Positions 27,965 to 64,000 of a stretch of 64,000 bases of DNA are shown here, in pieces. The stretch lies in NCBI GenBank assembly GCA_965644295.1, contig CBFFRP010000148.1, forward strand, positions 81,342-145,341, written 5' to 3'. How positions within the stretch are numbered: position 1 is the stretch's first letter; each line of letters starts with the position of its first letter. Origin of the DNA: Paraphysomonas bandaiensis. Taxonomy: Eukaryota; Protista; Chrysophyceae. The notes under the pieces were generated by a model. It had not been told where the DNA came from. It ran no database searches and saw nothing but the letters and a program-made list of their open reading frames with translations. The translations under genes and the position numbers were made by a program.

Positions 27965-28438
27965 CTACAGATTCATTTGAGAAAAGTTTAGCTGTTGATT
28001 TGTCACTCCTAAAACCTTCGCCACGCGTAGTCGGCGATTTTGAGATCTTTGGCTCTCTTCATTATCACTTTCATCTTCTGTTTCATACTGTGGGTCGTAC
28101 GCTCGCAACAAAGCCAAGCTTTTCATATTGTTCCAGTTATTATGCTGGCCATTAGGAAGTATCTCATTTCCTGCTACAAGCAAGTGTGAAATGGTTGATG
28201 GAATTTCAACTTGTGGATTAGTTCCATCATCCAAAGGCACAACCGTTAGAGCTTGGTCTCTTCCAATCCCAGCATTTGCCATTTTAGCAGTCGTGATACG
28301 ACCCTGAACTTCCACCTTGCTAAGGCGGTCTTCGACGTTGCTAAGGCGGTCTTTGATATTGCTCAACTCTTCCACCACAGGAGTGATCGCTTTATTGAGC
28401 TCCTCTTGTATCAATCTTCTAAACAATTCAGCATCCAT
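27965..28438 (-). CDS. Small coiled-coil protein resembling Mug135/DUF1773; solo copy with 1 LSNVEDR heptad
   Basis: Intact intronless 157-aa ORF: a heptad stalk followed by AKMAN…ALTVVPLDDGTNP…P.T…LALLRAY…RRLRVAKVLG. The family was judged by eye. Confidence 0.7.
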   Translation of the reverse strand: MDAELFRRLIQEELNKAITPVVEELSNIKDRLSNVEDRLSKVEVQGRITTAKMANAGIGRDQALTVVPLDDGTNPQVEIPSTISHLLVAGNEILPNGQHNNWNNMKSLALLRAYDPQYETEDESDNEESQRSQNRRLRVAKVLGVTNQQLNFSQMNL

Positions 28439-28839
28439 CCTGTATAATCATCTAATAGAATGACATGATGGTTCATTCATTCTTATTCGGTTGCTTAACT
28501 TCTCAGTCAGTTGAGGAGTTCGTTGGCTCCAACGGTTTATTTTTCAGTCCTACAAACTCGAAGGACGCTGTGGAGCTTCCTACATACAGCAGTACGTATG
28601 ATATAGCAGGGTTTTGTCCATGGGTATACTGTACTCAGGCAAAAAAGCCGAATTTTTCTTGTTGTATATGATTTTTCTTTGCATGAAAACGAATATTTGT
28701 GTAAAATGTCTTGTTTTACGGAACTAAAAACTGAGGGGATTGTGTTGCCCCATCAATTTTTTTTGAATTTTACATACAATTTCTTTATGTTCTGCGAATC
28801 TCCGCATATGATATCTTCCATACATTACATACAGAGAAG

Positions 28840-29235
28840 TACATACCTACAGCATACGATACATTCCATATGATACATACACACATATAAGATCCATCTG
28901 CACAGTGGTGTCTATGTACAGTGTATCCATAGTATAGCAATACACGTACATATATACATAGTCCCATATAGATACATACATACATAACCAGCACACTCCA
29001 CATAAATCCATATTACACTCATACTGTAAAGAACACACTCAATACACACGAGATCACAGTTCTCATCCTCTATCATAAGACAGTGCTGGTGTCTGTCTAC
29101 TGTAAACCCCATATATATACTGCATACACACACATACATACACATACACACACAGTAACACACACACACACACACACACATACATAACTACCATATCATA
29201 TCAATCATATATATGTACCTCACATATTCCTACAC
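28840..29235. repeat. CA/TACA-rich low-complexity tract including (CA)n
   Basis: Seen directly, between divergently oriented genes. Confidence 0.8.
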
Positions 29236-34845: not shown

Positions 34846-35128
34846 GGTTATAGTTTGATTTAGTATGTGTAGGGAAGATAGTGTAGTGATTAAAGATCAT
34901 CTCAACACACACCTGCATATACAATAGCAGATACCTCCATAGATACACATACCTGCATACATACACGTATGCATCTTAGGTTTCGGGAATAAATTGAAGC
35001 AAAAATACTATATATAACTGCAATACAACTACGACTGGAATACAGACAATTATTGTCTCCATATATTAGGCATCTTTGAACAAAAATACACAAAGGATGC
35101 CGATACGCATACATACATAACACACATG

Positions 35129-35474
35129 CATACATACATACATACATACATACATACATACATACATACATACATACATACATACATACATACATACATA
35201 CATACATACATACATACATACATACATACATACATACATACATACATACATACATACATACATACATACATACATACATACATACATACATACATACATA
35301 CATACATACATACATACATACCTACATACATACATACATACATACATACATACATACATACATACATACATACATACATACATACATACATACATACATA
35401 CATACATACATACATACATACATACATACATACATACATACATACATACATACATACATACATACATACATACA

Positions 35475-35505: not shown

Positions 35506-35625
35506 GGTATTCTCCGTCCAGCCCATACACGTATGGATATTTCTGATCTATGTATTAAGGTATGGATATATCATGCATATATCTCACACACACATATAGA
35601 CATCCCTCCCACTGACTTCACACTC

Positions 35626-43500: not shown

Positions 43501-46500
43501 TGGCCATGCGAAATTGCTCGGCGCCGGAGATTCACTGGGTCTAATAGGCGAGACTCTATTTTGACTTTTATCTTCGTCATGACAATGTTGTGCTTGCTCC
43601 ATGCGATCTCTAGATTCAGATATCCAATTTGAGGCATCTAGATCATCAGCAGAAAGCCCCATCGGATTGCGAGTAGGTTTAGGCGAGACAGCAGTCTACA
43701 TGCGATGCGTATGACAAACACTTCATACAGATAGAACTAACGTATACCTGGGTGGGAAGAGGATGAGTGTGGTAACTATCGCGGTACTCGCTATGGCAAT
43801 TAGTGTACTTAAGAGGGGCACGTGTAGGTGCTAAAAAAATCACGATTAAGTTTATAAGGTAACCATCAGAAAAGGTAAACAACCATTCGCCACTGATAAA
43901 ACTTACCCTCGGGTGTTGGCCATGCAAAATTATTAGGTGAAGTCACGCACACTTGCGACGCTAATCCAGCCGTTGGACCTTCACTCGATGACAGACAGTT
44001 CTGTGTGGCTTGCTCCATTTGGTCTTTTGCTTCTGATTTCCAATTTCTAACATTGCTATGCGTTGTTGATACTTCAAACGGGTTGGTATCTTCCCGTGCA
44101 AGTGATTTTGCCTATGTATAGCTCAACTTAATACAATAACAAAACTGAATGAGGCAACCTTTGACAGCACCCATGCATGGTAGTTGTCCCTGTACTCCGT
44201 ATGACAATCTTTGAAATCAAGTTCCCGTTTATCCGTAGCTGCAGGAAAAATTAGAAATTATACAAACAAAATCACAAAAATTCACACCTTCGGGGACAGG
44301 CCATGCGAAGTTCGAAGGACGGGGACCTTCCAAGATATCCGCAGATGATGGATTCCCAGCAACTCTTCCATCATCTTCACCACAAGCCGCTGCTTGAGCA
44401 GCCTCTTCCATCGCCTCCTTTGCGAACGTCTTCCATTTCGAACTGTCCAAGGCATCTGCAGACAGGCCGAGAGGATTTGTAGAATCTTTGCGCACAATTC
44501 GAGCGGGCTGCGTCACATATTTAGCTTCAATTCTCACAAATATCCATACTAATATAACAACATCGTGGGGGGGGGACTGCTACATTTACGTACCTCAGCC
44601 AAGGGCCAAGCATGGTAGCTGTCGTGAGTTTCCGTGTGTGTCTGACTCAAATCAAGGGGACCACGCTTAACAACTATGCAACATACAAAAAATTAAAGAA
44701 TGAACATATATTGCATAAGCACCATGAAGGGGAAAAAATAAAATACAAGCAACATAAGATGGGGGTGAACCAACCACAAAAACAAAGCATGTACAGTACC
44801 GAATATACAATACGTAGCTACCAACTATAACTTACCATCTCCCACAGGCCATGCGAAGTTCGAAGGAGGAGGAACTCTCAAAATCTCCGCAGATGATGGA
44901 TTCCCAGCAACTCTTCCATCATCTTCACCACAAGCCGCTGCTTGAGCAGCCTCTTCCATCGCCTCCTTTGCGAACGACTTCCATTTCGAACTGTCCAAGG
45001 CATCTGCAGACAGGCCGAGAGGATTTGTAGAATCTTTGCGCACAATTCGAGCGGGCTGCGTCACATATTTAGCTTCAATTCTCACAAATATCCATACTAA
45101 TATAACAACATCGTGGGGGGGGGGACTGCTACATTTACGTACCTCAGCCAAGGGCCAAGCATGGTAGCTGTCGTGAGTTTCCGTGTGTGTCTGACTCAAA
45201 TCAAGGGGACCACGCTTAACAACTATGCAACATACTATAAATTAAAGAATGAACATATATTGCATAAGCACCATGAAGAGGGAAAAATATAATACAAGCA
45301 ACATAAGATGGGGGTGAACCAACCACAAAAACAAAGCATGTACAGTACCGAATATACGACACTTAGCTACAACTATAACTTACCATCTCCCACAGGCCAT
45401 GCGAAATTCGAAGGAGGAGGAACTCTCAAAATCTCCGCAGATGATGGATTCCCAGCAACTCTTCCATCATCTTCACCACAAGCCGCTGCTTGAGCAGCCT
45501 CTTCCATCGCCTCCTTTGCGAACGACTTCCATTTCGAACTGTCCAAGGCATCTGCAGACAGGCCGAGAGGATTTGTAGAATCTTTGCGCACAATTCGAGC
45601 GGGCTGCGTCACATATTTAGCTTCAATTCTCACAAATATCCATACTAATATAACAACATCGTAGGGGGGGATTGCTACATTTACGTACCTCAGCCAAGGG
45701 CCAAGCATGGTAGCTGTCGTGAGTTTCCGTGTGTGTCTGACTCAAATCAAGGGGACCACGCTTAACAACTATGCAACATACAAAAAATTAAAGAATGAAC
45801 ATATATTGCATAAGCACCATGAAGGGGAAAAAATAAAATACAAGCAACATAAGATGGGGGTGAACCAACCACAAAAACAAAGCATGTACAGTACCGAATA
45901 TACAATACGTAGCTACCAACTATAACTTACCATCTCCCACAGGCCATGCGAAGTTCGAAGGAGGAGGAACTCTCAAAATCTCCGCAGATGATGGATTCCC
46001 AGCAACTCTTCCATCATCTTCACCACAAGCCGCTGCTTGAGCAGCCTCTTCCATCGCCTCCTTTGCGAACGACTTCCATTTCGAACTGTCCAAGGCATCT
46101 GCAGACAGGCCGAGAGGATTCGAAGTGGTTCTCGGTGGACTACTTGGGGGCTGCAAGCATCGAAACAGATATTACTTATGCAGTATATATAATATGTAGA
46201 ATAGTATTGCTCTCATATAATTCACAATAACGTATTGTGAGAACTACCGTATGAATCTCCCATTCTTTGAACTTATCCTTGTATTCTGAAGTAATGTTAC
46301 TAGTTTTCCGAGATCTTACTGTGGGCGCTAAGGTGTAATTATTTGTGTTAGTACGTCATTCAACAAAATTGGTACAGTTTCCATGGAAGAGCGCAAAGAT
46401 ACCTCCGATGCGTGGAACAGAATGTTCCTTTGAGCTCTGAGACTTTTGATGTGTAGACGATCCGTTGTCTGTTGAGTTCACAGGTCGTCGATAGTTTACA

Positions 46501-50041: not shown

Positions 50042-51910
50042 TCACTGCTGTGTTGACGATGATATAGACTGTCTGCTCGTTCCTTTGCGCACAGACTCAT
50101 CGAGTGCTTGTTGAGAGGGACCGTAGGTTCCAAAGCTCTCGACACTGTGCAAACTAACAGTCGCGACGCTATTCGTACTACTGTCCATGGAGCCGATATA
50201 CGGAGTTGGAGTTCTAGACGGCTGTGGGTACAAGGGGTTGCTTGTTGCATCTCGGCCATACGCGGAACCGGGGCGCATTCCATGTGAAGTATCGAGGTTA
50301 GTCAACTGATACTCAGTGCCTTCGCGATAACTCGATAGTTTTCCAGATACGTCCAGACACATATACAAAATTGCCATACTACTCACTGCCGTAATAACCA
50401 GTATCCCAGCGGTAACCGCTATATTTATTTCGAACTCTTTCACTGACTCTTTATCGGTCTCCTCCTTGACCCCTGCCGTATAAATATACACCCCACCGTT
50501 GTGATAAAGTTCGTGGTGTTTATCTGAGTGCTCCGGGTCTTCCCAGGCCAACGACGCACCATAGGCTCCCACAGCGATTGACTGTTCAAATATTGACACC
50601 GAATACCCAAACATATCCCCTGGAATTTCGTCCTCAGGTTGCTTGTAAGTATGATACGACCAATAGTAATTTGATTCCCCCTTTACTGATTTCTCGTACT
50701 CACGATAAATATACACTGCACCTGAGCCACCCTCATTATAGGCGCCAATAGATGCTAAATTTTCATACACATCCAAAGAGTATCCAAAATGTCCTTCTTC
50801 AGAAGGATATTTGGGGTATATTTCTTCAACCAAATACCACGTATTGTAACTCTTCGCGTACGAGTAGGCAGCACCTGATTGGGAAATGACACCATATTTC
50901 TTCGATTCTGATGAGTGCTGAGGCGATCCCACTAATACTGAATCCTCCCATATGGCAACTGCTTGTCCATACAAGTCGTAATGAGCTCCATCTTCAGGTA
51001 TGAGTTTGGCTTCCTGCTTCCACGAATAGCCATCGTATTGTGTGTCATCGTAGGCAATATTGAATATATAGGCTGCTCCAATCTCCATTCCTTCATCAGA
51101 AGTAGTGCCTGGGGCACCAGCAACTACCAATCCGTCATAAATTGCAACGGATGATCCAAAGCGTTGGAAAGCAGCGCCATCGGATGGAGTGATCTTCTGC
51201 TTGTATGTCCACACCCCTGTTTTGTCGTCCACGAAAATTCGCATCCACACATACACACACCCTGCCAAAGTGCCAATTTCATCACATCCCCACGCACCCA
51301 CAACAGTTGTGTTCCCAGATGCCCCTACAGAACATCCGAAGTAGTCTTGACCGCTTCCATCCTCAGGAACCAATTTCATCACATACTCGAGTTTGGTTAG
51401 TTTAAATTCATCGTGGTGATGCTCGTGATTGTGTTCATCATGATGCTCTGCGTGGCGTTCATATAAATACGCCGCTCCAGAGTCTTGCCCCATTGCGTCA
51501 TTATTAATTGCCCCAACTACAGCAACATGACTGTGCAATGCTACAGAGTAGCCGAATTCATCATCCTCAGCTCCATCTTCGGGATGCAATACATATCCCA
51601 ATGCCCAGTCGACATAATCATCACCATGCTTATAGTATACATACGCAGCACCCGTCCTTATACCACGAGATTCATCTCCTCTGGCACCCACAATCATGAG
51701 GTCATCCCATATGGCCACACTACTACCATACATTTCATCCGTACGTTCACCCCATATAATATGCTCATATGAATACTCTTCTTCAAATGTCCATGATATC
51801 TCTTCCTCATACATATCATCATCATATTCTTCTAAAGGAATCATTTGTAACCCATTAGATGCATAAGTATGATAGATATAAGATGATAATAACCATATGA
51901 ATAATCTCAT
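50042..51910 (-). CDS. FG-GAP (integrin-alpha beta-propeller) repeat type I membrane protein
   Basis: Signal peptide, about 7 (F/Y)GxSVA…VGA…GAAY repeats, one TM helix (IAVTAGILVITAVSSMAILYMCL) and an S/T-rich tail. Confidence 0.9.
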   Translation of the reverse strand: MRLFIWLLSSYIYHTYASNGLQMIPLEEYDDDMYEEEISWTFEEEYSYEHIIWGERTDEMYGSSVAIWDDLMIVGARGDESRGIRTGAAYVYYKHGDDYVDWALGYVLHPEDGAEDDEFGYSVALHSHVAVVGAINNDAMGQDSGAAYLYERHAEHHDEHNHEHHHDEFKLTKLEYVMKLVPEDGSGQDYFGCSVGASGNTTVVGAWGCDEIGTLAGCVYVWMRIFVDDKTGVWTYKQKITPSDGAAFQRFGSSVAIYDGLVVAGAPGTTSDEGMEIGAAYIFNIAYDDTQYDGYSWKQEAKLIPEDGAHYDLYGQAVAIWEDSVLVGSPQHSSESKKYGVISQSGAAYSYAKSYNTWYLVEEIYPKYPSEEGHFGYSLDVYENLASIGAYNEGGSGAVYIYREYEKSVKGESNYYWSYHTYKQPEDEIPGDMFGYSVSIFEQSIAVGAYGASLAWEDPEHSDKHHELYHNGGVYIYTAGVKEETDKESVKEFEINIAVTAGILVITAVSSMAILYMCLDVSGKLSSYREGTEYQLTNLDTSHGMRPGSAYGRDATSNPLYPQPSRTPTPYIGSMDSSTNSVATVSLHSVESFGTYGPSQQALDESVRKGTSRQSISSSTQQ

Positions 51911-52709
51911 AGTTAATATACACTCAGATGACTGTATTATACCCTTACAACAACAACAGTAAGAAGGACCAAATAGGATATAATCAAGAACTCAATGATT
52001 AATCAAGATAATGTTAATTCATTATATCCAGAGATTAATGTGACTGTGTATATATATGGTCTGTGTTGTATATATATATGCTCGTAATCTCACATCACAA
52101 CACACTAAAAAATGAATTTTTCATTATTTCATTGCTATAAAATACGATCCCCACACTCTTATTTTTAGAGTAAGATAGTAGAAATCCCTTATTTTCCAAT
52201 TTCTAGGATAAATTGAGAATAGGAAATCTCAGTATGTTGTTAAAAATTAAGTATGAATTTCATGAGTTTTTGAATAAATTTGACCCTCATATACTGTCAG
52301 TATACCAGCAACCGTATATACAAAATACATACTCTAATAATACGTAATTTATTTACATAGTTTCGACCAGAAAACAAGAGATTTTACACAAATATTCGTT
52401 TTCATGCATCTAAAAAAGAACACTGCTATATTACATGTCGATTTATTGATTGTTTCATTGAAAAGTCATCATTTTTTCAGTGGAAAGTGAAAAAAAGTGA
52501 TTTTTCAAATAAATAAACAATGAAAAAATCAATAAAATCGATATATTGCTGCTGTTCATGTACAGACTGAAGGTCCACAGCGTCCTTCGAGTTTGTAGGA
52601 CTGAAAAATAAACCGTTGGAGCCAACGAACTCCTCAACTGACTGAGAAGTTAAGCAACCGAATAAGAATGAATGAACCATCATGTCATTCTATTAGATGA
52701 TTATACAGG

Positions 52710-53204
52710 ATGGATGCTGAATTGCTTAGAAGATTGATACAAGAGGAGCTCAATAAAGCGATCACTCCTGTGGTGGAAGAGTTGAGCAATATCAAAGACC
52801 GCCTTAGCAACGTCGAAGACCGCCTTAGCAACGTCGAAGACCGCCTTAGCAAGGTGGAAGTACAGGGTCGTATCACGACTGCTAAAATGGCAAATGCTGG
52901 GATTGGAAGAGACCAAGCTCTAACGGTTGTGCCTTTGGATGATGGAACTAATCCACAAGTTGAAATTCCAGCAACCATTTCACACTTGCTTGTAGCAGGA
53001 AATGAGATACTTCCAAATGGCCAGCATAACAACTGGAACAAGAGGAAAAGTTTGGCTTTGTTGCGAGCGTACGACCCACAGTATGAAACGGATGATGAAA
53101 GTGATAATGAAGAGAGTCAGAGGTCTAGAAATCGCCGACTACGGGTGGCGAAGGTTTTAGGAGTGACAAAGCAACAGCTAAACTTTGCTCAAATGAATCT
53201 GTAG
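52710..53204 (+). CDS. Mug135/DUF1773-like coiled-coil protein, unit 1 (2 LSNVEDR heptads)
   Basis: Intact 164-aa ORF, paralog of 27965-28438. Confidence 0.7.
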   Translation: MDAELLRRLIQEELNKAITPVVEELSNIKDRLSNVEDRLSNVEDRLSKVEVQGRITTAKMANAGIGRDQALTVVPLDDGTNPQVEIPATISHLLVAGNEILPNGQHNNWNKRKSLALLRAYDPQYETDDESDNEESQRSRNRRLRVAKVLGVTKQQLNFAQMNL

Positions 53205-53918
53205 TCTTGTATGTGTTGAAGTGGTGGTACATGAGTACAAAAATATCTTATATTGTGCCGCGTTCATCTCAAGAATACGCCTTTTGCTTCAGTATGGGCT
53301 CTGCGTAAGTCGACCTCTGAATTCTAGTGTCATAGGAACTTTTATTAACATCAGCGTTTTCTATCGAACACACAGTGCGTATCAGGACTGTGTATCAATT
53401 AATTAATTTTCAATTAATTGCAACTGAATGGGACAGCAAGTAATAGTTTGCAATCAATTGGCTATGATCTGCATCAATTAATTAGCAGTTTATTGATATG
53501 CAGATATGCAGCCCTGGTGTGAGTAAGTTAACGCTCGCCGTTAGCGTTACAATAAGTAGAATTTATCTATTAGTCACTTGAATGTATAAATCAAAAATTC
53601 TAAACTACAGCAGCAGTCCTTATAAAACAGTACTATTTTTCTAGTTTTTATCACTTGCTTGTTGCAAGTTAATTAGTGCTACCTATAATACTACGTTGCA
53701 CTTATACACCTTATAATGCTTGCGTTGACGCACAAGCAACTTTCGTAGCGTTAAGTAGTAGGTTATTATAGTATGCACTAGTATATTGAAAGTCTTTTTA
53801 TTTAGCAATAGGCGTTAAAAACTCGTTCCGATACAGTGGCTAGTTGAATGCTAGATCTACTAGTTAGACCTCTACCCATAACTAATCAGCACAAGTTCTA
53901 CTATCCTACTATTTAGCG

Positions 53919-54500
53919 CTACAGAAGCTGCTTGTGCGTCGCCGCAAGCACCAAGGTGCAACCACTTCCGTTCTTGATGTTGCGTGTGAGTTCGCCCTGC
54001 TCGTGTGTCTGAGGACTCACTGGCGCGTGTTGTCCGGGGGTCTCCCCTTGGGATAAGGTTCCGCCTGGCTCTGAGGTACAGGGTTCTGTATTAAGGTCCT
54101 GAGCGTACCGAGCACTAGATGTGTGCACTGAGAGGTTGATGGTGGTGTGGTGGAATGTGGCGGTGTCGCTTGTGCGTGGGTGTACATGCGTGATGCGGCG
54201 CGGGGATAGGGCTGTAGGCGTGTATGAGCCGTCCGTAAAGATTGCCTTATAGGTATCCGCGTTTACATCATCCAGTCCTAATGTGCGGATAATGTTGGTC
54301 AGGGTGTCGGTATCTTGAGGTTCCGGATTGTCGGGTTGGTGGAGTGTGAGGCCAACCTCCGTACCCCATTCCCGCAGGCTTAAGGCAAAGTGGTGGTAGT
54401 TTGGGTACGGTGCGGTAGTCTGTGTTAGAAGAAAGTGCGCTGCGTCACCGGCATCCCCGCCTAGGATTATGGCGCGCTGTAGGGAGCCCCATTTTTGTTC
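53919..54500 (-). mobile_element. Non-LTR retrotransposon fragment (RT connection and start of RNase H)
   Basis: A Met-less frame of 194 codons (including its stop), EQKWGSLQRAIILGG…YKAIFTDGSY; FTDGS is the RNase H first-Asp motif. GC-rich relative to its flanks. Confidence 0.6.
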
Positions 54501-54911
54501 TTATTTCCCAAGTTAATTAGTGCTACCTATAATACTACGTTGCACTTATACACCTTATAATGCTTGCGTTGACGCACAAGCAACTTTCGTAGCGTTAAGT
54601 AGTAGGTTATTATAGTATGCACTAGTTATGTTTTGGTAAATGCCTATCTAGCTTCTCTTATATGACTATCATAATATTGATTGAAATATATTGTGAGCCA
54701 CTTTAACAGAAACAATATTGATGAAAATTTTGGCCGGTCGGCCAGTCAATATATTTTACAATGTATTCCAATTTATTGTACAGTGTATTGAAATTTAATA
54801 TATTGTTTTCTAGCCCTGGTATGTATGTAGCTACTGAGCTGGTTAAGGCTCTCAAATGCATATTGCTAGTAAACTGACATTCCACACAACACATAGTAGT
54901 TACACACTACA

Positions 54912-55820
54912 TGTTGGAAATTGCTCATTCTTAACTAGATCTCAGAGAGAATTTGTCGTTAGTCTAGATAGATCAATTAATATCAATTACACTAAATGTG
55001 ACAAACAACACAAACTCATTTTGTTCTACACATAATCTCCTACATATGTGAACCTCTCGATACTAAACATATCTTCAAATATCAAACTATTCAGTTTGTC
55101 AATATCATCACGGCATTTGTACATCACCATACTTCACTGTATTCTCGTACGGTGTCTTCAAGTGCCACACTGAATATACTAGAATATAATCCATATTCAA
55201 ATACTCCCACTCAATGTAGAATGCAGCGATATGAAACAACAGTGAGCACAGTAATCTTTATGCTATGATTATCTATTTTCATCGGTAAAATAGTGTGAAA
55301 TCTTTTAAAGATACATCATGTATCACTAGCAGTCAACTAAATATACAGTTCTGTCGGATTTTTACTTACTAAAACACACCTTTGACATCTTCGGGGTTGT
55401 TTCTTCTGCTGCTCCTTCATTCTCTTAACCCCGGTAATCGTTTTCTCATGACAACTGAAAATATTCGTAGCTAATGCCTTTGTGAAAATTTTGATACACT
55501 GGATTCTCTGAGAGATCCTTTGCACTCATGCTGTTCATAAAGAATGGAGTCGGCTTCGCTACTAAGAGTCCGAGCTCCTTACCAATTTTACTCCTCTCGG
55601 AGTTCTAACAATCTTTAGAACACGTCTCTTCAGCAATGAGGTCTTCTCTACCTTCCGAGTCTACCCTCCGAGCTGGTCTCCACTTCTCGAACTGTGGAGA
55701 TCTCTCCGCCTCTACATACAAGTTCGTTACCCTAATATCCTCTGGACTCAAGTCTGGACGTGTTAATTTTGCAATGCATGCATCGGGTACATCTACCATA
55801 TTAATTTCACCCAATCAGAT
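54912..55820 (-). mobile_element. Copia remnant: LTR 54912-55203, polypurine tract, deleted RNase H end and pre-RT fragment
   Basis: Reverse complement of ~26545-27240; SAKDLSENPVY and FTKAL; YVEAERSPQFEKWR resembles the Copia pre-RT EA..S…W motif. Confidence 0.85.
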
Positions 55821-56207
55821 GCATTTGCTAACCTATGCTGCAACCGCTTCCTCTGTATACGACCATCACCGTCAAGTTCAATCGGTCGACGAGGTGTATA
55901 AGAATTCGATCCTTGCTCATCCTGAGCACACACTTCTTGCGTTATGGGAGGAGCCCCGCTCGAGGTTTACTAAGTTAAGTGCAGCTATGGCAGTACTAAG
56001 AATGATGTTGGAAGAAAATAATCCACCAATGGCTGGTTACCCCAATGAGGAGTAGGTCAGGGACACTGGACTAATAGTTGGATTAAATGATGTATCATGA
56101 ATGAAAAGACAAAGTATGTATTCAATTAAAATAATGAAGTAAAATTAACGGCAATTACTACTTAGAACCTACTAATATACATACCAAGACAAATCTGAAC
56201 CAAAGCG

Positions 56208-56645
56208 TAAATACGCCGCTCCAGAGTTTTGCCCCATTGCGTCATTATTAATTGCCCCAACTACAGCAACATGACTGTGCAATGCTACAGAGTAGCCGAA
56301 TTCATCATCCTCAGCTCCATCTTCGGGATGCAATACATATCCCAATGCCCAGTCGACATAATCATCACCATGCTTATAGTATACATACGCAGCACCCGTC
56401 CTCATACCACGAGATTCATCTCCTCTGGCACCCACAATCATGAGGTCATCCCATATGGCGACACAACTACCATCTGTACGTTCAACCTATATAATATGCT
56501 CATATGAATACTCTTCTTCAAATGTCCATGATATCTCTTCCTCATACATATCATCATCATATTCTTCTAAAGGAATCATTTGTAACCCATTAGATGCATA
56601 AGTATGATAGATATAAGATGATAATAACCATATGAATAATCTCAT
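56208..56645 (-). pseudogene. 5' fragment of the FG-GAP gene (unit 2)
   Basis: Copy of 51464-51910 with a TGG>TAG stop and a 9-bp deletion; truncated after SGAAYL. Confidence 0.9.
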
Positions 56646-57444
56646 AGTTAATATACACTCAGATGACTGTATTATACCCTTACAACAACAACAGTAAGAA
56701 GGACCAAATAGGATATAATCAAGAACTCAATGATTAATCAAGATAATGTTAATTCATTATATCCAGAGATTAATGTGACTGTGTATATATATGGTCTGTG
56801 TTGTATATATATATGCTCGTAATCTCACATCACAACACACTAAAAAATGAATTTTTCATTATTTCATTGCTATAAAATACGATCCCCACACTCTTATTTT
56901 TAGAGTAAGATAGTAGAAATCCCTTATTTTCCAATTTCTAGGATAAATTGAGAATAGGAAATCTCAGTATGTTGTTAAAAATTAAGTATGAATTTCATGA
57001 GTTTTTGAATAAATTTGACCCTCATATACTGTCAGTATACCAGCAACCGTATATACAAAATACATACTCTAATAATACGTAATTTATTTACATAGTTTCG
57101 ACCAGAAAACAAGAGATTTTACACAAATATTCGTTTTCATGCATCTAAAAAAGAACACTGCTATATTACATGTCGATTTATTGATTGTTTCATTGAAAAG
57201 TCATCATTTTTTCAGTGGAAAGTGAAAAAAAGTGATTTTTCAAATAAATAAACAATGAAAAAATCAATAAAATCGATATATTGCTGCTGTTCATGTACAG
57301 ACTGAAGGTCCACAGCGTCCTTCGAGTTTGTAGGACTGAAAAATAAACCGTTGGAGCCAACGAACTCCTCAACTGACTGAGAAGTTAAGCAACCGAATAA
57401 GAATGAATGAACCATCATGTCATTCTATTAGATGATTATACAGG

Positions 57445-57981
57445 ATGGATGCTGAATTGTTTAGAAGATTGATACAAGAGGAGCTCAATAAAGCGATCAC
57501 TCCTGTGGTGGAAGAGTTGAGCAATATCAAAGACCGCCTTAGCAACGTCGAAGACCGCCTTAGCAACGTCGAAGACCGCCTTAGCAACGTCGAAGACCGC
57601 CTTAGCAACGTCGAAGACCGCCTTAGCAAGGTGGAAGTTCAGGGTCGTATCACGACTGCTAAAATGGCAAATGCTGGGATTGGAAGAGACCAAGCTCTAA
57701 CGGTTGTGCCTTTGGATGATGGAACTAATCCACAAGTTGAAATTCCAGCAACCATTTCACACTTGCTTGTAGCAGGAAATGAGATACTTCCAAATGGCCA
57801 GCATAACAACTGGAACAAGAGGAAAAGTTTGGCTTTGTTGCGAGCGTACGACCCACAGTATGAAACGGATGATGAAAGTGATAATGAAGTGAGCCAGAGG
57901 TCTAGAAATCGCCGACTACGGGTGGCGAAGGTTTTAGGAGTGACAAAGCAACAGCTAAACTTTGCTCAAATGAATCTGTAG
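57445..57981 (+). CDS. Mug135/DUF1773-like coiled-coil protein, unit 2 (4 LSNVEDR heptads)
   Basis: Intact 178-aa ORF. Confidence 0.7.
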   Translation: MDAELFRRLIQEELNKAITPVVEELSNIKDRLSNVEDRLSNVEDRLSNVEDRLSNVEDRLSKVEVQGRITTAKMANAGIGRDQALTVVPLDDGTNPQVEIPATISHLLVAGNEILPNGQHNNWNKRKSLALLRAYDPQYETDDESDNEVSQRSRNRRLRVAKVLGVTKQQLNFAQMNL

Positions 57982-58695
57982 TCTTGTATGTGTTGAAGTG
58001 GTGGTACATGAGTACAAAAATATCTTATATTGTGCCGCGTTCATCTCAAGAATACGCCTTTTGCTTCAGTATGGGCTCTGCGTAAGTCGACCTCTGAATT
58101 CTAGTGTCATAGGAACTTTTATTAACATCAGCGTTTTCTATCGAACACACAGTGCGTATCAGGACTGTGTATCAATTAATTAATTTTCAATTAATTGCAA
58201 CTGAATGGGACAGCAAGTAATAGTTTGCAATCAATTGGCTACGATCTGCATCAATTAATTAGCAGTTTATTGATATGCAGATATGCAGCCCTGGTGTGAG
58301 TAAGTTAACGCTCGCCGTTAGCGTTACAATAAGTAGAATTTATCTATTAGTCACTTGAATGTATAAATCAAAAATTCTAAACTACAGCAGCAGTCCTTAT
58401 AAAACAGTACTATTTTTCTAGTTTTTATCACTTGCTTGTTGCAAGTTAATTAGTGCTACCTATAATACTACGTTGCACTTATACACCTTATAATGCTTGC
58501 GGTGACGCACAAACAACTTTCGTAGCGTTAAGTAGTAGGTTATTATAGTATGCACTAGTATATTGAAAGTCTTTTTATTTAGCAATAGGCGTTAAAAACT
58601 CGTTCCGATACAGTGGCTAGTTGAATGCTAGATCTACTAGTTAGACCTCTACCCATAACTAATCAGCACAAGTTCTACTATCCTACTATTTAGCG

Positions 58696-59277
58696 CTACA
58701 GAAGCTGCTTGTGCGTCGCCGCAAGCACCAAGGTGCAACCACTTCCGTTCTTGATGTTGCGTGTGAGTTCGCCCTGCTCGTGTGTCTGAGGACTCACTGG
58801 CGCGTGTTGTCCGGGGGTCTCCCCTTGGGATAAGGTTCCGCCTGGCTCTGAGGTACAGGGTTCTGTATTAAGGTCCTGAGCGTACCGAGCACTAGATGTG
58901 TGCACTGAGAGGTTGATGGTGGTGTGGTGGAATGTGGCGGTGTCGCTTGTGCGTGGGTGTACATGCGTGATGCGGCGCGGGGATAGGGCTGTAGGCGTGT
59001 ATGAGCCGTCCGTAAAGATTGCCTTATAGGTATCCGCGTTTACATCATCCAGTCCTAATGTGCGGATAATGTTGGTCAGGGTGTCGGTATCTTGAGGTTC
59101 CGGATTGTCGGGTTGGTGGAGTGTGAGGCCAACCTCCGTACCCCATTCCCGCAGGCTTAAGGCAAAGTGGTGGTAGTTTGGGTACGGTGCGGTAGTCTGT
59201 GTTAGAAGAAAGTGCGCTGCGTCACCGGCATCCCCGCCTAGGATTATGGCGCGCTGTAGGGAGCCCCATTTTTGTTC
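58696..59277 (-). mobile_element. Non-LTR retrotransposon fragment (unit 2 copy)
   Basis: Copy of 53919-54500. Confidence 0.6.
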
Positions 59278-59688
59278 TTATTTCCCAAGTTAATTAGTGC
59301 TACCTATAATACTACGTTGCACTTATACACCTTATAATGCTTGCGTTGACGCACAAGCAACTTTCGTAGCGTTAAGTAGTAGGTTATTATAGTATGCACT
59401 AGTTATGTTTTGCTAAATGCCTATCTAGCTTCTCTTATATGACTATCAAAATATTGATTGAAATATATTGTGAGCCACTTTAACAGAAACAATATTGATG
59501 AAAATTTTGGCCGGTCGGCCAGTCAATATATTTTACAATGTATTCCAATTTATTGTACAGTGTATTGAAATTTAATATATTGTTTTCTAGCCCTGGTATG
59601 TATGTAGCTACTGAGCTGGTTAAGGCTCTCAAATGCATATTGCTAGTAAACTGACATTCCACACAACACATAGTAGTTACACACTACA

Positions 59689-60597
59689 TGTTGGAAATTG
59701 CTCATTCTTAACTAGATCTCAGAGAGAATTTGTCGTTAGTCTAGATAGATCAATTAATATCAATTACACTAAATGTGACAAACAACACAAACTCATTTTG
59801 TTCTACACATAATCTCCTACATATGTGAACCTCTCGATACTAAACATATCTTCAAATATCAAACTATTCAGTTTGTCAATATCATCACGGCATTTGTACA
59901 TCACCATACTTCACTGTATTCTCGTACGGTGTCTTCAAGTGCCACACTGAATATACTAGAATATAATCCATATTCTAATACTCCCACTCAATGTATAATG
60001 CAGCGATATGAATCAACAGTGAGCACAGTAATCTTTATGCTATGATTATCTATTTTCATCGGTAAAATAGTGTGAAATCTTTTAAAGATACATCATGTAT
60101 AACTAGCAGTCAACTAAATATACAGTTCTGTCGGATTTTTACTTACTAAAACACACCTTTAACATCTTCGGGGTTGTTTCTTCTGCTGCTCCTTCATTCT
60201 CTTAACCCCGGTAATCGTTTTCTCATGACAACTGAAAATATTCGTAGCTAATGCCTTTGTGAAAATTTTGATACACTAGATTCTCTGAGAGATCCTTTGC
60301 ACTCAAGCTGTTCATAAAGAATGGAGTCGGCTTCGCTACTAAGAGTCCGAGCTCCTTACCAATTTTACTCCTCTCGGAGTTCTAACAATCTTTAGAACAC
60401 GTCTCTTCAGCAATGAGGTCTTCTCTACCTTCCGAGTCTACCCTCCGAGCTGGTCTCCACTTCTCGAACTGTGGAGATCTCTCCGCCTCTACATACAAGT
60501 TCGATACCCTAATATCCTCTGGACTCAAGTCTGGACGTGTTAATTTTGCAATGCATGCATCGGGTACATCTACCATATTAATTTCACCCAATCAGAT
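59689..60597 (-). mobile_element. Copia remnant with LTR 59689-59980 (unit 2 copy)
   Basis: Copy of 54912-55820. Confidence 0.85.
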
Positions 60598-60984
60598 GCA
60601 TTTGCTAACCTATGCTGCAACCGCTTCCTCTGTATACGACCATCACCGTCAAGTTCAATCGGTCGACGAGGTATATAAGAATTCGATCCTTGCTCATCCT
60701 GAGCACACACTTCTTGCGTTATGGGAGGAGCCCCGCTCGAGGTTTACTAAGTTAAGTGCAGCTATGGCAGTACTAAGAATGATGTTGGAAGAAAATAATC
60801 CACCAATGGCTGGTTACCCCAATGAGGAGTAGGTCAGGGACACTGGACTAATAGTTGGATTAAATGATGTATCATGAATGAAAAGACAAAGTATGTATTC
60901 AATTAAAATAATGAAGTAAAATTAACGGCAATTACTACTTAGAACCTACTAATATACATACCAAGACAAATCTGAACCAAAGCG

Positions 60985-61422
60985 TAAATACGCCGCTCCA
61001 GAGTTTTGCCCCATTGCGTCATTATTAATTGCCCCAACTACAGCAACATGACTGTGCAATGCTACAGAGTAGCCGAATTCATCATCCTCAGCTCCATCTT
61101 CGGGATGCAATACATATCCCAATGCCCAGTCGACATAATCATCACCATGCTTATAGTATACATACGCAGCACCCGTCCTCATACCACGAGATTCATCTCC
61201 TCTGGCACCCACAATCATGAGGTCATCCCATATGGCGACACAACTACCATCTGTACGTTCAACCTATATAATATGCTCATATGAATACTCTTCTTCAAAT
61301 GTCCATGATATCTCTTCCTCATACATATCATCATCATATTCTTCTAAAGGAATCATTTGTAACCCATTAGATGCATAAGTATGATAGATATAAGATGATA
61401 ATAACCATATGAATAATCTCAT
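60985..61422 (-). pseudogene. 5' fragment of the FG-GAP gene (unit 3)
   Basis: Same stop and deletion as the unit 2 fragment. Confidence 0.9.
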
Positions 61423-62221
61423 AGTTAATATACACTCAGATGACTGTATTATACCCTTACAACAACAACAGTAAGAAGGACCAAATAGGATATAATCAAG
61501 AACTCAATGATTAATCAAGATAATGTTAATTCATTATATCCAGAGATTAATGTGACTGTGTATATATATGGTCTGTGTTGTATATATATATGCTCGTAAT
61601 CTCACATCACAACACACTAAAAAATGAATTTTTCATTATTTCATTGCTATAAAATACGATCCCCACACTCTTATTTTTAGAGTAAGATAGTAGAAATCCC
61701 TTATTTTCCAATTTCTAGGATAAATTGAGAATAGGAAATCTCAGTATGTTGTTAAAAATTAAGTATGAATTTCATGAGTTTTTGAATAAATTTGACCCTC
61801 ATATACTGTCAGTATACCAGCAACCGTATATACAAAATACATACTCTAATAATACGTAATTTATTTACATAGTTTCGACCAGAAAACAAGAGATTTTACA
61901 CAAATATTCGTTTTCATGCATCTAAAAAAGAACACTGCTATATTACATGTCGATTTATTGATTGTTTCATTGAAAAGTCATCATTTTTTCAGTGGAAAGT
62001 GAAAAAAAGTGATTTTTCAAATAAATAAACAATGAAAAAATCAATAAAATCGATATATTGCTGCTGTTCATGTACAGACTGAAGGTCCACAGCGTCCTTC
62101 GAGTTTGTAGGACTGAAAAATAAACCGTTGGAGCCAACGAACTCCTCAACTGACTGAGAAGTTAAGCAACCGAATAAGAATGAATGAACCATCATGTCAT
62201 TCTATTAGATGATTATACAGG

Positions 62222-62716
62222 ATGGATGCTGAATTGTTTAGAAGATTGATACAAGAGGAGCTCAATAAAGCGATCACTCCTGTGGTGGAAGAGTTGAGCA
62301 ATATCAAAGACCGCCTTAGCAACGTCGAAGACCGCCTTAGCAACGTCGAAGACCGCCTTAGCAAGGTGGAAGTTCAGGGTCGTATCACGACTGCTAAAAT
62401 GGCAAATGCTGGGATTGGAAGAGACCAAGCTCTAACGGTTGTGCCTTTGGATGATGGAACTAATCCACAAGTTGAAATTCCAGCAACCATTTCACACTTG
62501 CTTGTAGCAGGAAATGAGATACTTCCAAATGGCCAGCATAACAACTGGAACAAGAGGAAAAGTTTGGCTTTGTTGCGAGCGTACGACCCACAGTATGAAA
62601 CGGATGATGAAAGTGATAATGAAGTGAGCCAGAGGTCTAGAAATCGCCGACTACGGGTGGCGAAGGTTTTAGGAGTGACAAAGCAACAGCTAAACTTTGC
62701 TCAAATGAATCTGTAG
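62222..62716 (+). CDS. Mug135/DUF1773-like coiled-coil protein, unit 3 (2 LSNVEDR heptads)
   Basis: Intact 164-aa ORF. Confidence 0.7.
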   Translation: MDAELFRRLIQEELNKAITPVVEELSNIKDRLSNVEDRLSNVEDRLSKVEVQGRITTAKMANAGIGRDQALTVVPLDDGTNPQVEIPATISHLLVAGNEILPNGQHNNWNKRKSLALLRAYDPQYETDDESDNEVSQRSRNRRLRVAKVLGVTKQQLNFAQMNL

Positions 62717-63500
62717 TCTTGTATGTGTTGAAGTGGTGGTACATGAGTACAAAAATATCTTATATTGTGCCGCGTTCATCTCAAGAATACGCCTTTTGCT
62801 TCAGTATGGGCTCTGCGTAAGTCGACCTCTGAATTCTAGTGTCATAGGAACTTTTATTAACATCAGCGTTTTCTATCGAACACACAGTGCGTATCAGGAC
62901 TGTGTATCAATTAATTAATTTTCAATTAATTGCAACTGAATGGGACAGCAAGTAATAGTTTGCAATCAATTGGCTACGATCTGCATCAATTAATTAGCAG
63001 TTTATTGATATGCAGATATGCAGCCCTGGTGTGAGTAAGTTAACGCTCGCCGTTAGCGTTACAATAAGTAGAATTTATCTATTAGTCACTTGAATGTATA
63101 AATCAAAAATTCTAAACTACAGCAGCAGTCCTTATAAAACAGTACTATTTTTCTAGTTTTTATCACTTGCTTGTTGCAAGTTAATTAGTGCTACCTATAA
63201 TACTACGTTGCACTTATACACCTTATAATGCTTGCGGTGACGCACAAACAACTTTCGTAGCGTTAAGTAGTAGGTTATTATAGTATGCACTAGTATATTG
63301 AAAGTCTTTTTATTTAGCAATAGGCGTTAAAAACTCGTTCCGATACAGTGGCTAGTTGAATGCTAGATCTACTAGTTAGACCTCTACCCATAACTAATCA
63401 GCACAAGTTCTACTATCCTACTATTTAGCGCTACAGAAGCTGCTTGTGCGTCGCCGCAAGCACCAAGGTGCAACCACTTCCGTTCTTGATGTTGCGTGTG

Positions 63501-64000
63501 TGTTGGGAAATGCTCATTTTACTTAGATCAAAGAGAGATTAAGTTGTTAGACTAGATAGATTTATTAATATCGTTTACACAAATTGTGTTAAACAACACA
63601 AGCTCGTTTTGTGCCATGCATAAATCACTACTTCTGTAGACCTTTCGCTACTAAACATATCTTGAAAGAGCAAACTATTTCAGTTTTCTCAATATCATAA
63701 CAGCATCTACACATCACCATACTTCACTGTATTCTCGTACATTGTCTTCAAGTACCACATTGAATATACTAGGATACAGTCCATATTCTAATACTCCCAC
63801 TCAATGTAGAATGCAGTGATACGAAACAACAATGAGTACAGTGATCTTCATGCTATAAACTAGTCTCATAGGTAAAATAGATGTGAAATCTTATCAAGAT
63901 ACATATATAACTAGCAGTCAACTAGATATATAGTTATGTGGGATTCTCACCCACTAAAACACACCTTTAACCTCTTCGGGGTCGCTTCTTCTGCTGCTCC
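63501..64000 (-). mobile_element. Independent Copia insertion: 3' LTR 63501-63793, polypurine tract and 3' UTR; continues beyond the window
   Basis: The unit sequence breaks after GTTGCGTGTG (63500) and switches to TGTTGGGAAATGCTC. This LTR has many more substitutions against the unit LTRs than those have against each other. Confidence 0.85.

What the first reader, a model, noticed from the sequence alone, without database searches (positions are those of the whole stretch)
52710..62716. Amplified, heptad-length-variable Mug135/DUF1773-like gene family: candidate selfish (meiotic-driver-like) system in a protist
Seen: four intact, intronless paralogs (27965-28438 minus; 52710, 57445, 62222 plus) with a short N-terminal helix, a heptad coiled-coil stalk and a ~100-aa C-terminal domain (AKMAN…LTVVPLDDGTNP…IP.T…LLRAY…RRLRVAKVLG). 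Every other recognisable sequence in the repeat unit is broken, yet these ORFs have no stops or frameshifts, and the solo and array copies differ by several synonymous as well as replacement changes. Knowledge, from memory: this motif order resembles the fungal Mug135-like C-terminal domain (DUF1773), and S. pombe mug135 is the single-protein toxin-antidote meiotic driver tdk1, which has a repeat stalk plus C-terminal domain. Inference: this may be a selfish or conflict-related gene family spreading beside retrotransposon LTRs, a context reminiscent of the wtf drivers, in a non-fungal lineage.
Basis: partly seen in the sequence, partly recalled or inferred. Interest (0 to 1): 0.85.

Follow-up and report, generated by a model that had tools for sequence, protein, structure and literature searches.

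The report
Tdk1-like stalk-and-cap proteins outside fungi
A marine protist carries a small, expressed gene family for coiled-coil "mushroom" proteins whose cap is predicted to have the fold of the fission-yeast meiotic-driver protein Tdk1, a domain so far reported only from fungi; whether these genes are selfish is untested.

Summary
Four intact, colinear ORFs of 157, 164, 178 and 164 aa sit at the stated coordinates, and they differ by whole heptads through a 21-bp VNTR.

- No window protein reaches the Pfam cut-off.
- PF08593 is nevertheless the commonest weak Pfam hit across the family (27 of 95 members).
- The AlphaFold model's best two matches among 48,161 PDB representatives are the two Tdk1 structures. 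Full length gives Z 9.2 over 138 residues; the cap alone gives Z 6.7 over Tdk1 265-349, with background at Z 3.2.
- A language-model search also lands on PF08593/DUF3294 clusters.
- A parallel homotrimer is predicted, as solved for Tdk1's C-terminal fragment.

The family is large (248 clusters at 50% identity). It occurs in stramenopiles, green algae, Amoebozoa and a centrohelid, although the domain is described as fungus-only.

The driver reading is not supported:
- the Tdk N-terminal domain and PP motif are absent;
- dN/dS is 0.2-0.3;
- the gene is transcribed in ordinary plankton communities;
- no transposon partner is found.

The local "amplification" is a very young 4.75-kb segmental duplication. 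Two other notes of this scan on the same window describe its VNTR and its tandem array.

The parts
27965..28438 (-). Solo paralogue, 157 aa, two DRLSxVE heptad units. It lies in an inverted dispersed duplicate of at least 1.7 kb (26835-28579) that is 90-99% identical to the array unit.
52710..53204 (+). Array copy 1, 164 aa, three heptad units.
57445..57981 (+). Array copy 2, 178 aa, five heptad units.
62222..62716 (+). Array copy 3, 164 aa, three heptad units. This is the protein that was modelled: helix 3-63, cap about 64-164.
57530..57637 (+). In-frame 21-bp VNTR, 5.1 copies at 97% matches. The equivalent arrays are at 52795-52860 and 62307-62372 (3.1 copies each). It sets the stalk length.
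   Evidence: a 150-aa allele with one unit is seen in an independent metagenome scaffold
51464..56207 (+). Tandem unit 1 of the segmental duplication. It starts inside the 5' coding part of the intact FG-GAP gene.
56208..60984 (+). Tandem unit 2 (4777 bp), about 99% identical to unit 1.
60985..63504 (+). Partial unit 3. Identity is 99% up to 63504. Beyond that there is only an 82% match to another part of the unit. The window and the contig end at 64000.
50042..51910 (-). Intact 622-aa FG-GAP-repeat gene, the host neighbour. Its 5' end was copied into units 2 and 3 as truncated fragments at 56172-56441 and 60949-61218.
57420..58197 (+). Extent covered by RNA-derived contigs: about 25 nt of 5'UTR, the ORF and about 216 nt of 3'UTR, colinear with the genome (no intron). 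Assemblies break at the VNTR.
53782..54169 (+). Truncated 5' piece of an abundant interspersed repeat, repeated at 58559-58946. It sits inside about 1 kb of extra sequence that the solo copy's equivalent flank lacks, so it is not part of the gene's own duplicated segment.

Best explanation
These are real, transcribed, selectively maintained genes. Each encodes a small protein built like the C-terminal fragment of fission-yeast Tdk1: one long alpha-helix that is predicted to form a parallel three-stranded coiled coil, capped by a globular domain of about 100 aa. That cap is a remote homologue of the Mug135_C / IPR013902 domain.

They belong to a large, previously unnamed family that is spread patchily over several eukaryotic supergroups.

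Shown or predicted here: the predicted fold match, the predicted trimer, expression, purifying selection and the taxonomic spread.

Inferred: by analogy with Tdk1(211-354), the protein works as a 'mushroom-shaped' oligomeric adaptor. The grooves of its stalk, or its cap, would dock a partner protein, and the caps may pair head to head. Stalk length is an evolutionarily labile spacer set by slippage of the 21-bp repeat.

The local cluster arose from an ordinary, very recent segmental tandem duplication that also copied a piece of the neighbouring FG-GAP gene, plus one older inverted dispersed duplicate.

The family lacks the N-terminal module that in Tdk1 makes the protein a toxin-antidote pair. 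I therefore read it as a non-driver (or not demonstrably driver) branch of the superfamily from which the fungal tdk drivers come. Its cellular role is unknown.
For: Fold, full length:
- The AF2 model was built without templates from an alignment of 14 rows, all window copies or hits of the window protein's own sequence search, none annotated with PF08593 (pLDDT 89.8).
- Foldseek's top two of 350,542 PDB chains are Tdk1 9JA5 and 9JA6 (prob 1.00, TM 0.55-0.66). The next hit has prob 0.06.
- In the exhaustive VIA-align search of 48,161 chains only those two reach Z>=8 (9.2 and 8.2; 138 and 135 residues; Tdk1 208-349). Generic coiled coils plateau at Z 6.0 with about 50 residues aligned.

Fold, cap only:
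- Model pLDDT 87.8. Tdk1 is again first and second (Z 6.7 and 6.3, rmsd 3.0 A, 81 residues, Tdk1 265-349). Background starts at Z 3.2.
- That range coincides with the Pfam domain, given as residues 268-340 in PMC11551393 and 269-340 in the 2025 preprint.

Sequence:
- PF08593 is hit by 27 of 95 family cap domains (best E 5.4e-5). The next family is hit by 5 of 95.
- The weak hits fall in matching parts of the profile: profile 5-33 on the start of the cap. A separate protein of this genome on contig C97 matches profile 39-81.

Other methods:
- The language-model search gives a PF08593/DUF3294 cluster first (0.90, 189 of 256 features).
- The ESM-Atlas shape search gives Ascomycota clusters first, one of them 46% PF08593.

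Trimer: ipSAE 0.87 against a best control of 0.57. The three runs share at least 96% of contacts and partner pLDDT is at least 86. The tool reports that this mark was reached by 21 of 30 solved homomers and 0 of 23 solved single chains (calibrated on two copies, not three). Contacts are parallel and in register (28-28, 32-32 ... 49-49). This matches the solved parallel three-helix coiled coil of Tdk1.

Real gene:
- Zero-mismatch contigs from three independent marine metatranscriptomes, one of them poly(A)-selected, cover 57600-58197. The flanks 56752-57339 and 58264-58431 are silent. A near-identical MMETSP transcript exists.
- dN/dS is 0.24-0.30 for solo versus array and 0.20 for C148 versus C5.

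Family size and taxa: 248 representatives at E<=1e-3. Named sources are Dinobryon, Volvox, Pleodorina, Chlamydomonas leiostraca, Mastigamoeba, Pterocystis and Rhodelphis.

Duplication. An independent metagenome scaffold carries the internal array junction with a 150-aa allele.
Against: - No window protein reaches Pfam's 23.8-bit cut-off. The cap alone scores 13.6 bits and the full-length proteins give no hit.
- Most members give no PF08593 hit at all: 68 of 95, and 9 of 10 named or diverse members.
- A 95-sequence family profile does not find the Tdk1 sequence in the PDB.
- Foldseek does not list Tdk1 when the stalk is removed.
- Z 6.7 is below the tool's own caution level of 8.
- A profile-profile test against a fungal PF08593 alignment could not be run, because no fungal sequences were reachable.
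- Only the trimer was modelled. Dimers and tetramers were not compared, and any coiled coil tends to score well.
- The function is inferred by analogy only.
Confidence: 0.7

Rival explanations
1. One reading: the family is a Tdk1-like single-gene killer meiotic driver, or another toxin-antidote selfish element, spreading by duplication.
For: - Remote homology to the Tdk family.
- Several copies per genome plus degraded or rearranged copies on C379, C362, C179 and C577. The tdk authors treat these traits as family signatures.
- Patchy taxonomic distribution.
- Copy-number and stalk-length polymorphism between samples.
- Several copies lie close to contig ends.
- The young C233/C259 pair has 8 replacement against 2 silent changes.
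- Tdk1 also has a dispensable repeat region in its stalk.
Against: - There is no N-terminal Z-shaped domain or PP motif; the helix starts at residue 3. In Tdk1 the N-terminal region enforces the non-toxic tetramer and creates the oligomer mismatch that builds the toxic foci. Among the Tdk1 truncations and C-terminal-fragment fusions tested, only the one fused through a linker to a tetramer-forming coil was toxic.
- The tdk authors read fungal IPR013902 proteins lacking an N-terminal domain as suggestive of pseudogenes.
- omega is 0.2-0.3 here, against piN/piS 1.2 for tdk1.
- The minimal architecture is conserved in 248 clusters across supergroups.
- The gene is transcribed in bulk plankton.
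Confidence: 0.12
2. The resemblance to Tdk1 is convergent. A long helix followed by a small helical cap is a simple arrangement, and the family is an unrelated orphan coiled-coil protein.
For: - All Pfam hits are below threshold and mostly cover only about 25 profile positions.
- Foldseek on the cap alone misses Tdk1.
- The family profile does not hit the Tdk1 sequence.
- hhalign of the profile against the single C97 protein is not significant.
- The cap-only Z is 6.7.
Against: Three methods of different kinds point to the same family out of thousands:
- HMM: PF08593 is the top family of 24,736 by number of members hit.
- Structure: Tdk1 is the only chain standing above background, both with and without the stalk, and the alignment covers the whole domain.
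- Language-model features.
The Tdk1 structures were released in 2024, and no templates or PF08593-annotated sequences were used for the model.
Confidence: 0.15
3. The ORF is an accessory gene of a transposon or virus, and is multi-copy for that reason.
For: - A truncated abundant repeat lies 578 bp downstream of each array copy.
- A reverse-transcriptase-like fragment (YADD motif) lies about 3.4 kb from the C5 copy.
- The gene is intronless, also in Volvox.
Against: - The repeat sits in extra sequence that the solo copy's flank lacks.
- There is no RT, integrase or transposase ORF in the window.
- No transposon-type Pfam family is recorded, and no partner recurs, beside paralogues or homologues in other organisms. 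Their neighbours are PP2A-B56, RGS, a copper monooxygenase and a CSL zinc ribbon.
- There is no match among predicted viral structures.
- DNA homology between copies ends 141 bp upstream of the ATG, and the first 578 bp downstream are shared only with the solo copy and the C577 remnant.
Confidence: 0.03

Closest known systems
Tdk1 (mug135, SPCC330.04c) of Schizosaccharomyces pombe, specifically its C-terminal fragment Tdk1(211-354); PDB 9JA5 and 9JA6
   Same: - One extended alpha-helix followed directly by a globular domain of about 80-100 aa.
- Predicted parallel homotrimer on the helix, like the solved 'mushroom-shaped trimer'.
- Structural superposition of 138 residues (Z 9.2), and 81 residues for the cap alone (Z 6.7).
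- A repeat-containing stalk of variable length.
- Several copies and pseudogenes per genome.
   Different: - 150-180 aa against 357 aa.
- No N-terminal domain (Z-shape, residues 12-45), no PP linker and no homology to Tdk1 12-118.
- 17-19% identity in the structural alignment.
- No evidence of Bdf1 binding, toxicity or drive.
- Purifying rather than diversifying selection.
- The host is a marine protist, not a fungus.
Pfam PF08593 Mug135_C / InterPro IPR013902 (DUF1773), with the related PF07957 DUF3294
   Same: It is the commonest weak Pfam hit of the family. The N-terminal motif of the cap (N..G.....L..VP...G..P) aligns to profile positions 5-33. The nearest ESM-Atlas clusters by shape and by language-model features carry these families.
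   Different: The window proteins, and every family member whose score I saw, stay below the 23.8-bit gathering score. InterPro lists the domain as exclusively fungal, whereas this family is in stramenopiles, green algae, Amoebozoa, a centrohelid and Rhodelphis.
wtf killer meiotic drivers of fission yeast
   Same: Multi-copy, with some copies in repeat-rich places.
   Different: From my own knowledge, wtf genes encode multi-pass membrane proteins made from alternative transcripts and are flanked by Tf LTRs. Here the protein is a soluble coiled coil, RNA contigs show one colinear transcribed stretch, and no LTR association was found.

Membership tests
Pfam PF08593 Mug135_C / IPR013902 | Score at or above the curated gathering threshold (23.8 bits) | tested here: not met
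   Full-length window proteins give no hit at E<=10. The cap alone scores 13.6 bits, E 0.082. The C5 paralogue scores 14.2 bits and P0009 17.3 bits. 27 of 95 members hit at E<=1, best E 5.4e-5; the bit score of that best member was not listed.
   The cap-only AF2 model is first and second of 48,161 chains against Tdk1 265-349 (Z 6.7 and 6.3, rmsd 3.0-3.2 A, 81 residues); the next chain has Z 3.2. Caveats: this is a predicted model, and Foldseek alone misses the match.
Pfam PF08593 Mug135_C / IPR013902 | Profile-profile homology to the curated family alignment | not testable with these tools
   No fungal PF08593 sequences or HMM could be brought into hhalign. The family profile against PDB sequences does not find Tdk1.
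Pfam PF08593 Mug135_C / IPR013902 | A long alpha-helix directly N-terminal to the domain that forms a parallel trimeric coiled coil | tested here: met
   Helix 3-63. Homotrimer prediction ipSAE 0.87 against a best control of 0.57, with in-register contacts. This is a prediction only, and other stoichiometries were not compared.
tdk killer-meiotic-driver family (Tdk1, Tdk210, Tdk203) | N-terminal Z-shaped domain | tested here: not met
   The model is a single continuous helix from residue 3, and the whole protein has only about 60 residues before the cap. The feature is defined in bioRxiv 10.64898/2025.12.28.696746.
tdk killer-meiotic-driver family (Tdk1, Tdk210, Tdk203) | [quoted passage not shown] | tested here: not met
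   There is no PP in any of the four window proteins. A single Pro at residue 20 lies inside the predicted helix.
tdk killer-meiotic-driver family (Tdk1, Tdk210, Tdk203) | Several genes per genome with frequent pseudogenisation | tested here: met
   7 intact copies (C148 x4, C5, C233, C259) and degraded or rearranged copies on C379, C362, C179 and C577.
tdk killer-meiotic-driver family (Tdk1, Tdk210, Tdk203) | Killing of non-carrier meiotic progeny (transmission distortion) | not testable with these tools
   This needs crosses. Nothing here bears on it directly.
tdk killer-meiotic-driver family (Tdk1, Tdk210, Tdk203) | Excess of replacement polymorphism (tdk1 piN/piS 1.2) | tested here: not met
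   Between-paralogue dN/dS is 0.20-0.30. This is not the same statistic as within-population piN/piS. The C233/C259 pair gives 1.1, but on only 10 changes.

The most novel reading that the evidence does not exclude
The Tdk/Mug135_C superfamily is not a fungal invention. It is an ancient, patchily retained or horizontally spreading eukaryote-wide family. The short stalk-plus-cap proteins of protists and algae would then be either single-gene killer drivers working through a different autoinhibition trick, with the length-variable stalk setting compatibility, or the long-sought non-driver ancestors from which the fungal drivers were built by adding an N-terminal module.
Probability: 0.12. Interest if true: 0.9.

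Novelty: new variant of a known kind. Interest (0 to 1): 0.62.

Why it matters
The only experimentally understood proteins with this domain are single-protein toxin-antidote meiotic drivers. The current literature states that the domain is exclusive to fungi and argues for an origin of the driver family within fungi (bioRxiv 10.64898/2025.12.28.696746; PMC11551393).

A large, conserved, expressed family with the same stalk-and-cap core in stramenopiles, green algae, Amoebozoa and a centrohelid would move that origin, or the gene's horizontal reach, outside fungi.

It would also supply natural 'Tdk1C-only' proteins under purifying selection. That makes one open question directly testable: did tdk drivers evolve from a non-driver host protein, and what did the cap and stalk do before they became a weapon? 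Volvox, which has a genomic copy, is a genetically tractable sexual organism in which to ask this.

Tried and rejected
- Pfam on full-length window proteins: only coiled-coil noise.
- PF08593 HMM against the whole genome: it picked up only a different gene on C97, below the cut-off.
- Family profiles (14 and 95 sequences) against PDB sequences: no Tdk1 hit. The top hits are a designed coiled coil and a ribosomal L3 stretch, which I take as chance.
- Word-indexed homology search with the C97 protein: nothing.
- The same search with the 95-sequence profile at E<=10: more family members but no fungal PF08593 proteins, so no profile-profile test was possible.
- hhalign of the profile against the single C97 sequence: aligned in register but not significant.
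- Foldseek with the cap-only model: Tdk1 not listed; BTB/elongin-C rows at E>2 rejected as noise.
- Viral structure library: nothing.
- HTH reading of the C-terminal 'RRLRVAKVLGVT..QL' helices: only 5 of 95 weak HTH_8 hits and no structural match to an HTH domain above Z 3. Not adopted.
- Transposon-cargo reading: rejected (see rivals).
- Literature search for the Volvox and Pleodorina accessions: no paper.
- Organism name: not obtainable. Run and organism labels are coded, and the scan's notes held nothing.

Full report

Yes. The four ORFs are at the stated coordinates and are intact:

| Copy | Window coordinates | Strand | Length | DRLSxVE units |
|---|---|---|---|---|
| Solo | 27965-28438 | minus | 157 aa | 2 |
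| Array 1 | 52710-53204 | plus | 164 aa | 3 |
| Array 2 | 57445-57981 | plus | 178 aa | 5 |
| Array 3 | 62222-62716 | plus | 164 aa | 3 |

The length differences are multiples of 7 aa. They come from an in-frame 21-bp tandem repeat with 3.1, 5.1 and 3.1 copies at 95-97% matches.

The three plus-strand copies lie in a tandem unit of 4735/4777 bp that is about 99% identical.
- The unit begins inside the 5' coding part of an intact 622-aa FG-GAP-repeat gene (50042-51910, minus strand).
- Units 2 and 3 therefore carry truncated FG-GAP fragments.
- The third unit is partial, and the window ends at the contig end.

The solo copy sits in an inverted dispersed duplicate of at least 1.7 kb that is 90-99% identical to the unit.

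An independent metagenome scaffold (L027) matches the inside of the array, window 58867-61928, at 99.8%. It carries a 150-aa allele with a single heptad unit. The duplication is therefore not an assembly artefact, and heptad number is polymorphic: 1, 2, 3 and 5 units have been seen.

**2. What the protein looks like**

AlphaFold2 was run without templates on 14 family sequences. It gives a confident model (pLDDT 89.8) with one helix over residues 3-63 and then a compact domain with helices at 90-94, 111-121, 137-149 and 154-162. The cap alone also folds confidently (pLDDT 87.8, pTM 0.80).

A three-copy prediction passes its controls.
- ipSAE is 0.87 against a best control of 0.57.
- The runs share at least 96% of contacts, and partner pLDDT is at least 86.
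- The tool's calibration: the mark was reached by 21 of 30 solved homomers and 0 of 23 solved single chains. That calibration used two copies, not three.
- The contacts are parallel and in register (28-28, 32-32, 35-35, 39-39, 42-42, 46-46, 49-49), with further contacts between the last helices.
- Only the trimer was tried.

**3. Test of the Mug135/DUF1773 claim**

Formal membership fails.
- The full-length window proteins give no PF08593 hit at E<=10.
- The cap alone scores 13.6 bits against a cut-off of 23.8.

The weak signal is nevertheless specific.
- When 95 cap domains were scanned one by one, 27 hit PF08593 (best E 5.4e-5). The next most frequent family was hit by 5.
- The hits fall on profile positions 5-33, at the start of the cap.

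Structure gives the strongest evidence.

| Model | Search | Result for Tdk1 | Background |
|---|---|---|---|
| Full length | Foldseek, 350,542 PDB chains | 9JA5 and 9JA6 first and second, prob 1.00, TM 0.55-0.66 | Next hit prob 0.06 |
| Full length | Exhaustive aligner, 48,161 representatives | The only two chains with Z>=8: 9.2 and 8.2, 138 and 135 residues, Tdk1 208-349 | Coiled coils stop at Z 6.0 with about 50 residues, the helix alone |
| Cap only | Exhaustive aligner, 48,161 representatives | First and second: Z 6.7 and 6.3, rmsd 3.0 A, 81 residues on Tdk1 265-349 | Next chain Z 3.2 |
| Cap only | Foldseek | Tdk1 not listed | - |

- The range 265-349 is the Pfam-defined domain: residues 268-340 according to PMC11551393, 269-340 according to the 2025 preprint.
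- The Tdk1 entries were released in 2024, and the models used no templates and no PF08593-annotated sequences. So the models were not copied from those structures.
- The ESM-Atlas shape search puts Ascomycota clusters first, one of them 46% PF08593.
- A language-model feature search with the cap puts a PF08593/DUF3294 cluster first (0.90, 189 of 256 features).

Against homology:
- Foldseek with the cap alone does not list Tdk1.
- The family profile does not find the Tdk1 sequence.
- I could not obtain fungal PF08593 sequences for a profile-profile test.

I put remote homology at about 0.8-0.85.

**4. Correspondence with Tdk1**

According to PMC11551393, Tdk1(211-354) is an extended helix (211-275) plus a globular domain (276-354). 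Three subunits form a mushroom-shaped trimer on a parallel three-helix coiled coil, and two trimers pair head to head. Bdf1 docks in a groove between stalk helices.

The window protein reproduces this part and nothing more.

The features shared by Tdk driver proteins are an N-terminal Z-shaped domain, a PP motif, a helix of variable length and the IPR013902 domain. The first two are absent here.

PMC11551426 shows that the N-terminal region imposes the autoinhibited tetramer. Once that is released, it creates the oligomer mismatch that builds the toxic foci. Among the Tdk1 truncations and C-terminal-fragment fusions tested, only the one joined through a linker to a tetramer-forming coil formed foci and was toxic. 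Tdk1 also has a dispensable repeat region in its stalk, which parallels the VNTR here.

**5. The family**

A profile search of 1.84 billion cluster representatives finds 248 at E<=1e-3 and 175 at E<=1e-10. All are small proteins with the domain at the C-terminus.

Named sources:

| Organism | Group |
|---|---|
| Dinobryon | chrysophyte |
| Volvox carteri (XP_002956220.1, on a 903-kb contig) | green alga |
| Pleodorina starrii (928-kb contig) | green alga |
| Chlamydomonas leiostraca | green alga |
| Mastigamoeba balamuthi | Amoebozoa |
| Pterocystis | centrohelid |
| Rhodelphis limneticus | sister lineage to the red algae (my own knowledge) |

- The transcriptome-only records of the predators (Rhodelphis, Pterocystis) could come from prey. 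The green-algal and Mastigamoeba records are genomic.
- Among 136 complete members, period 7 is the best self-repeat in 85. In 27 the stalk has at least 40% self-identity at offset 7 or 14, and the repeat sequences are unrelated between members.
- Stalks range from 26 to 150 aa.
- Members of single 90%-identity clusters often differ by whole heptads: 150/157/164, 187/194, 145/152, 184/212.
- Stalk length is therefore recurrently labile across the family.
- The literature describes the domain as exclusively fungal or as primarily found in Ascomycota and Basidiomycota. A full-text search found no report outside fungi.

**6. Is it a working gene?**

- Zero-mismatch contigs from three independent marine metatranscriptomes, one of them poly(A)-selected, cover 57600-58197.
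- A culture-derived run covers 57420-58197.
- The intergenic flanks are silent in all runs, which argues against DNA carry-over.
- Assemblies break at the VNTR.
- A near-identical MMETSP transcript exists.
- Nei-Gojobori dN/dS is 0.24-0.30 for solo versus array (7.5-9.5 synonymous, 8.5 replacement changes) and 0.20 for C148 versus C5. For the young C233/C259 pair it is 1.1, on only 2 and 8 changes, which is not informative.

**7. Genome census and context**

The 62.5-Mb genome holds:
- 7 intact copies: C148 x4, C5 (67% identical), and a divergent pair on C233 and C259 that differ by five heptads;
- degraded or rearranged copies on C379, C362, C179 and C577.

The window is ordinary gene-dense chromosome: Vps35, RMI1, an IP3/ryanodine-receptor-like channel, GH95 and the FG-GAP gene. 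It has no retroelement ORF.

Each array unit contains a truncated 5' piece of an abundant interspersed repeat.
- More than 30 near-identical copies are listed, out of 3,405 first-look candidates.
- It has a sharp common 5' end, and the other copies run on further than the window's copy does.
- It lies within about 1 kb of extra sequence that the solo copy's flank lacks.
- Its class is unresolved.

No transposon gene recurs beside paralogues or foreign homologues, and there is no viral structural match.

**8. Verdict**

The selfish-driver inference and the LTR context are not supported. The amplification in the window is a recent, ordinary segmental duplication.

The new point is that a Tdk1C-like stalk-and-cap family exists widely outside fungi. 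Its function remains inferred.

Noticed in passing
G000:C97:35863-36324 (L026:4564-5025 +; also L018): A separate 154-aa coiled-coil protein of this genome is closer to fungal Mug135_C than the window family is. PF08593 scores 22.1 bits (cut-off 23.8) on profile positions 39-81, and its language-model neighbours are the DUF3294/Mug135_C clusters (0.93, 210 of 256 features). A 38%-identical paralogue lies at C200:167208-167498. The one word-indexed database search I ran found no relatives.
   Followed up: partly
window 53782-54169 and 58559-58946: Truncated 5' piece of a very abundant young interspersed repeat. More than 30 copies are listed at 94-98% identity, out of 3,405 first-look candidates. 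It has a sharp common start (ATTGAAAGTC...), and other copies continue at least 200 bp further. Its class (LTR, SINE or other) was not determined.
   Followed up: partly
window 44274-46216: About four tandem copies of a 547-549-bp unit (78-100% identical). They carry repeated ORFs on both strands, for example a 72-aa ORF at 44612-44830 and again at 45707-45925. No function was looked for.
   Followed up: no
window 35012-35450: Long array of an 8-bp tandem repeat, just upstream of the GH95-like gene at 35533-38001.
   Followed up: no
window 28912-29181; L025:4147-4602 (C259); L023:898-1456 (C5): TGTA/TATG-type microsatellites, which read as 'MYVC' repeats in translation, lie near three of the paralogues. 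They are a few hundred bases upstream of the solo copy and the C259 copy, and about 3.5 kb from the C5 copy. This may simply be a common microsatellite of this genome.
   Followed up: no
L023:8784-9185 (end of contig C5): An ORF fragment with a reverse-transcriptase-like YADD motif lies about 3.4 kb from the C5 paralogue, on a short 17-kb contig.
   Followed up: no
L036:10001-10630 (Volvox carteri GL378379.1): The Volvox homologue is called as a single uninterrupted 630-bp ORF. From my own knowledge Volvox genes are usually intron-rich, so this is unusual.
   Followed up: no
window 13369-22867: Consecutive ORFs with MIR, RIH and Ion_trans domains, apparently the exons of one IP3/ryanodine-receptor-like channel gene.
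   Followed up: no
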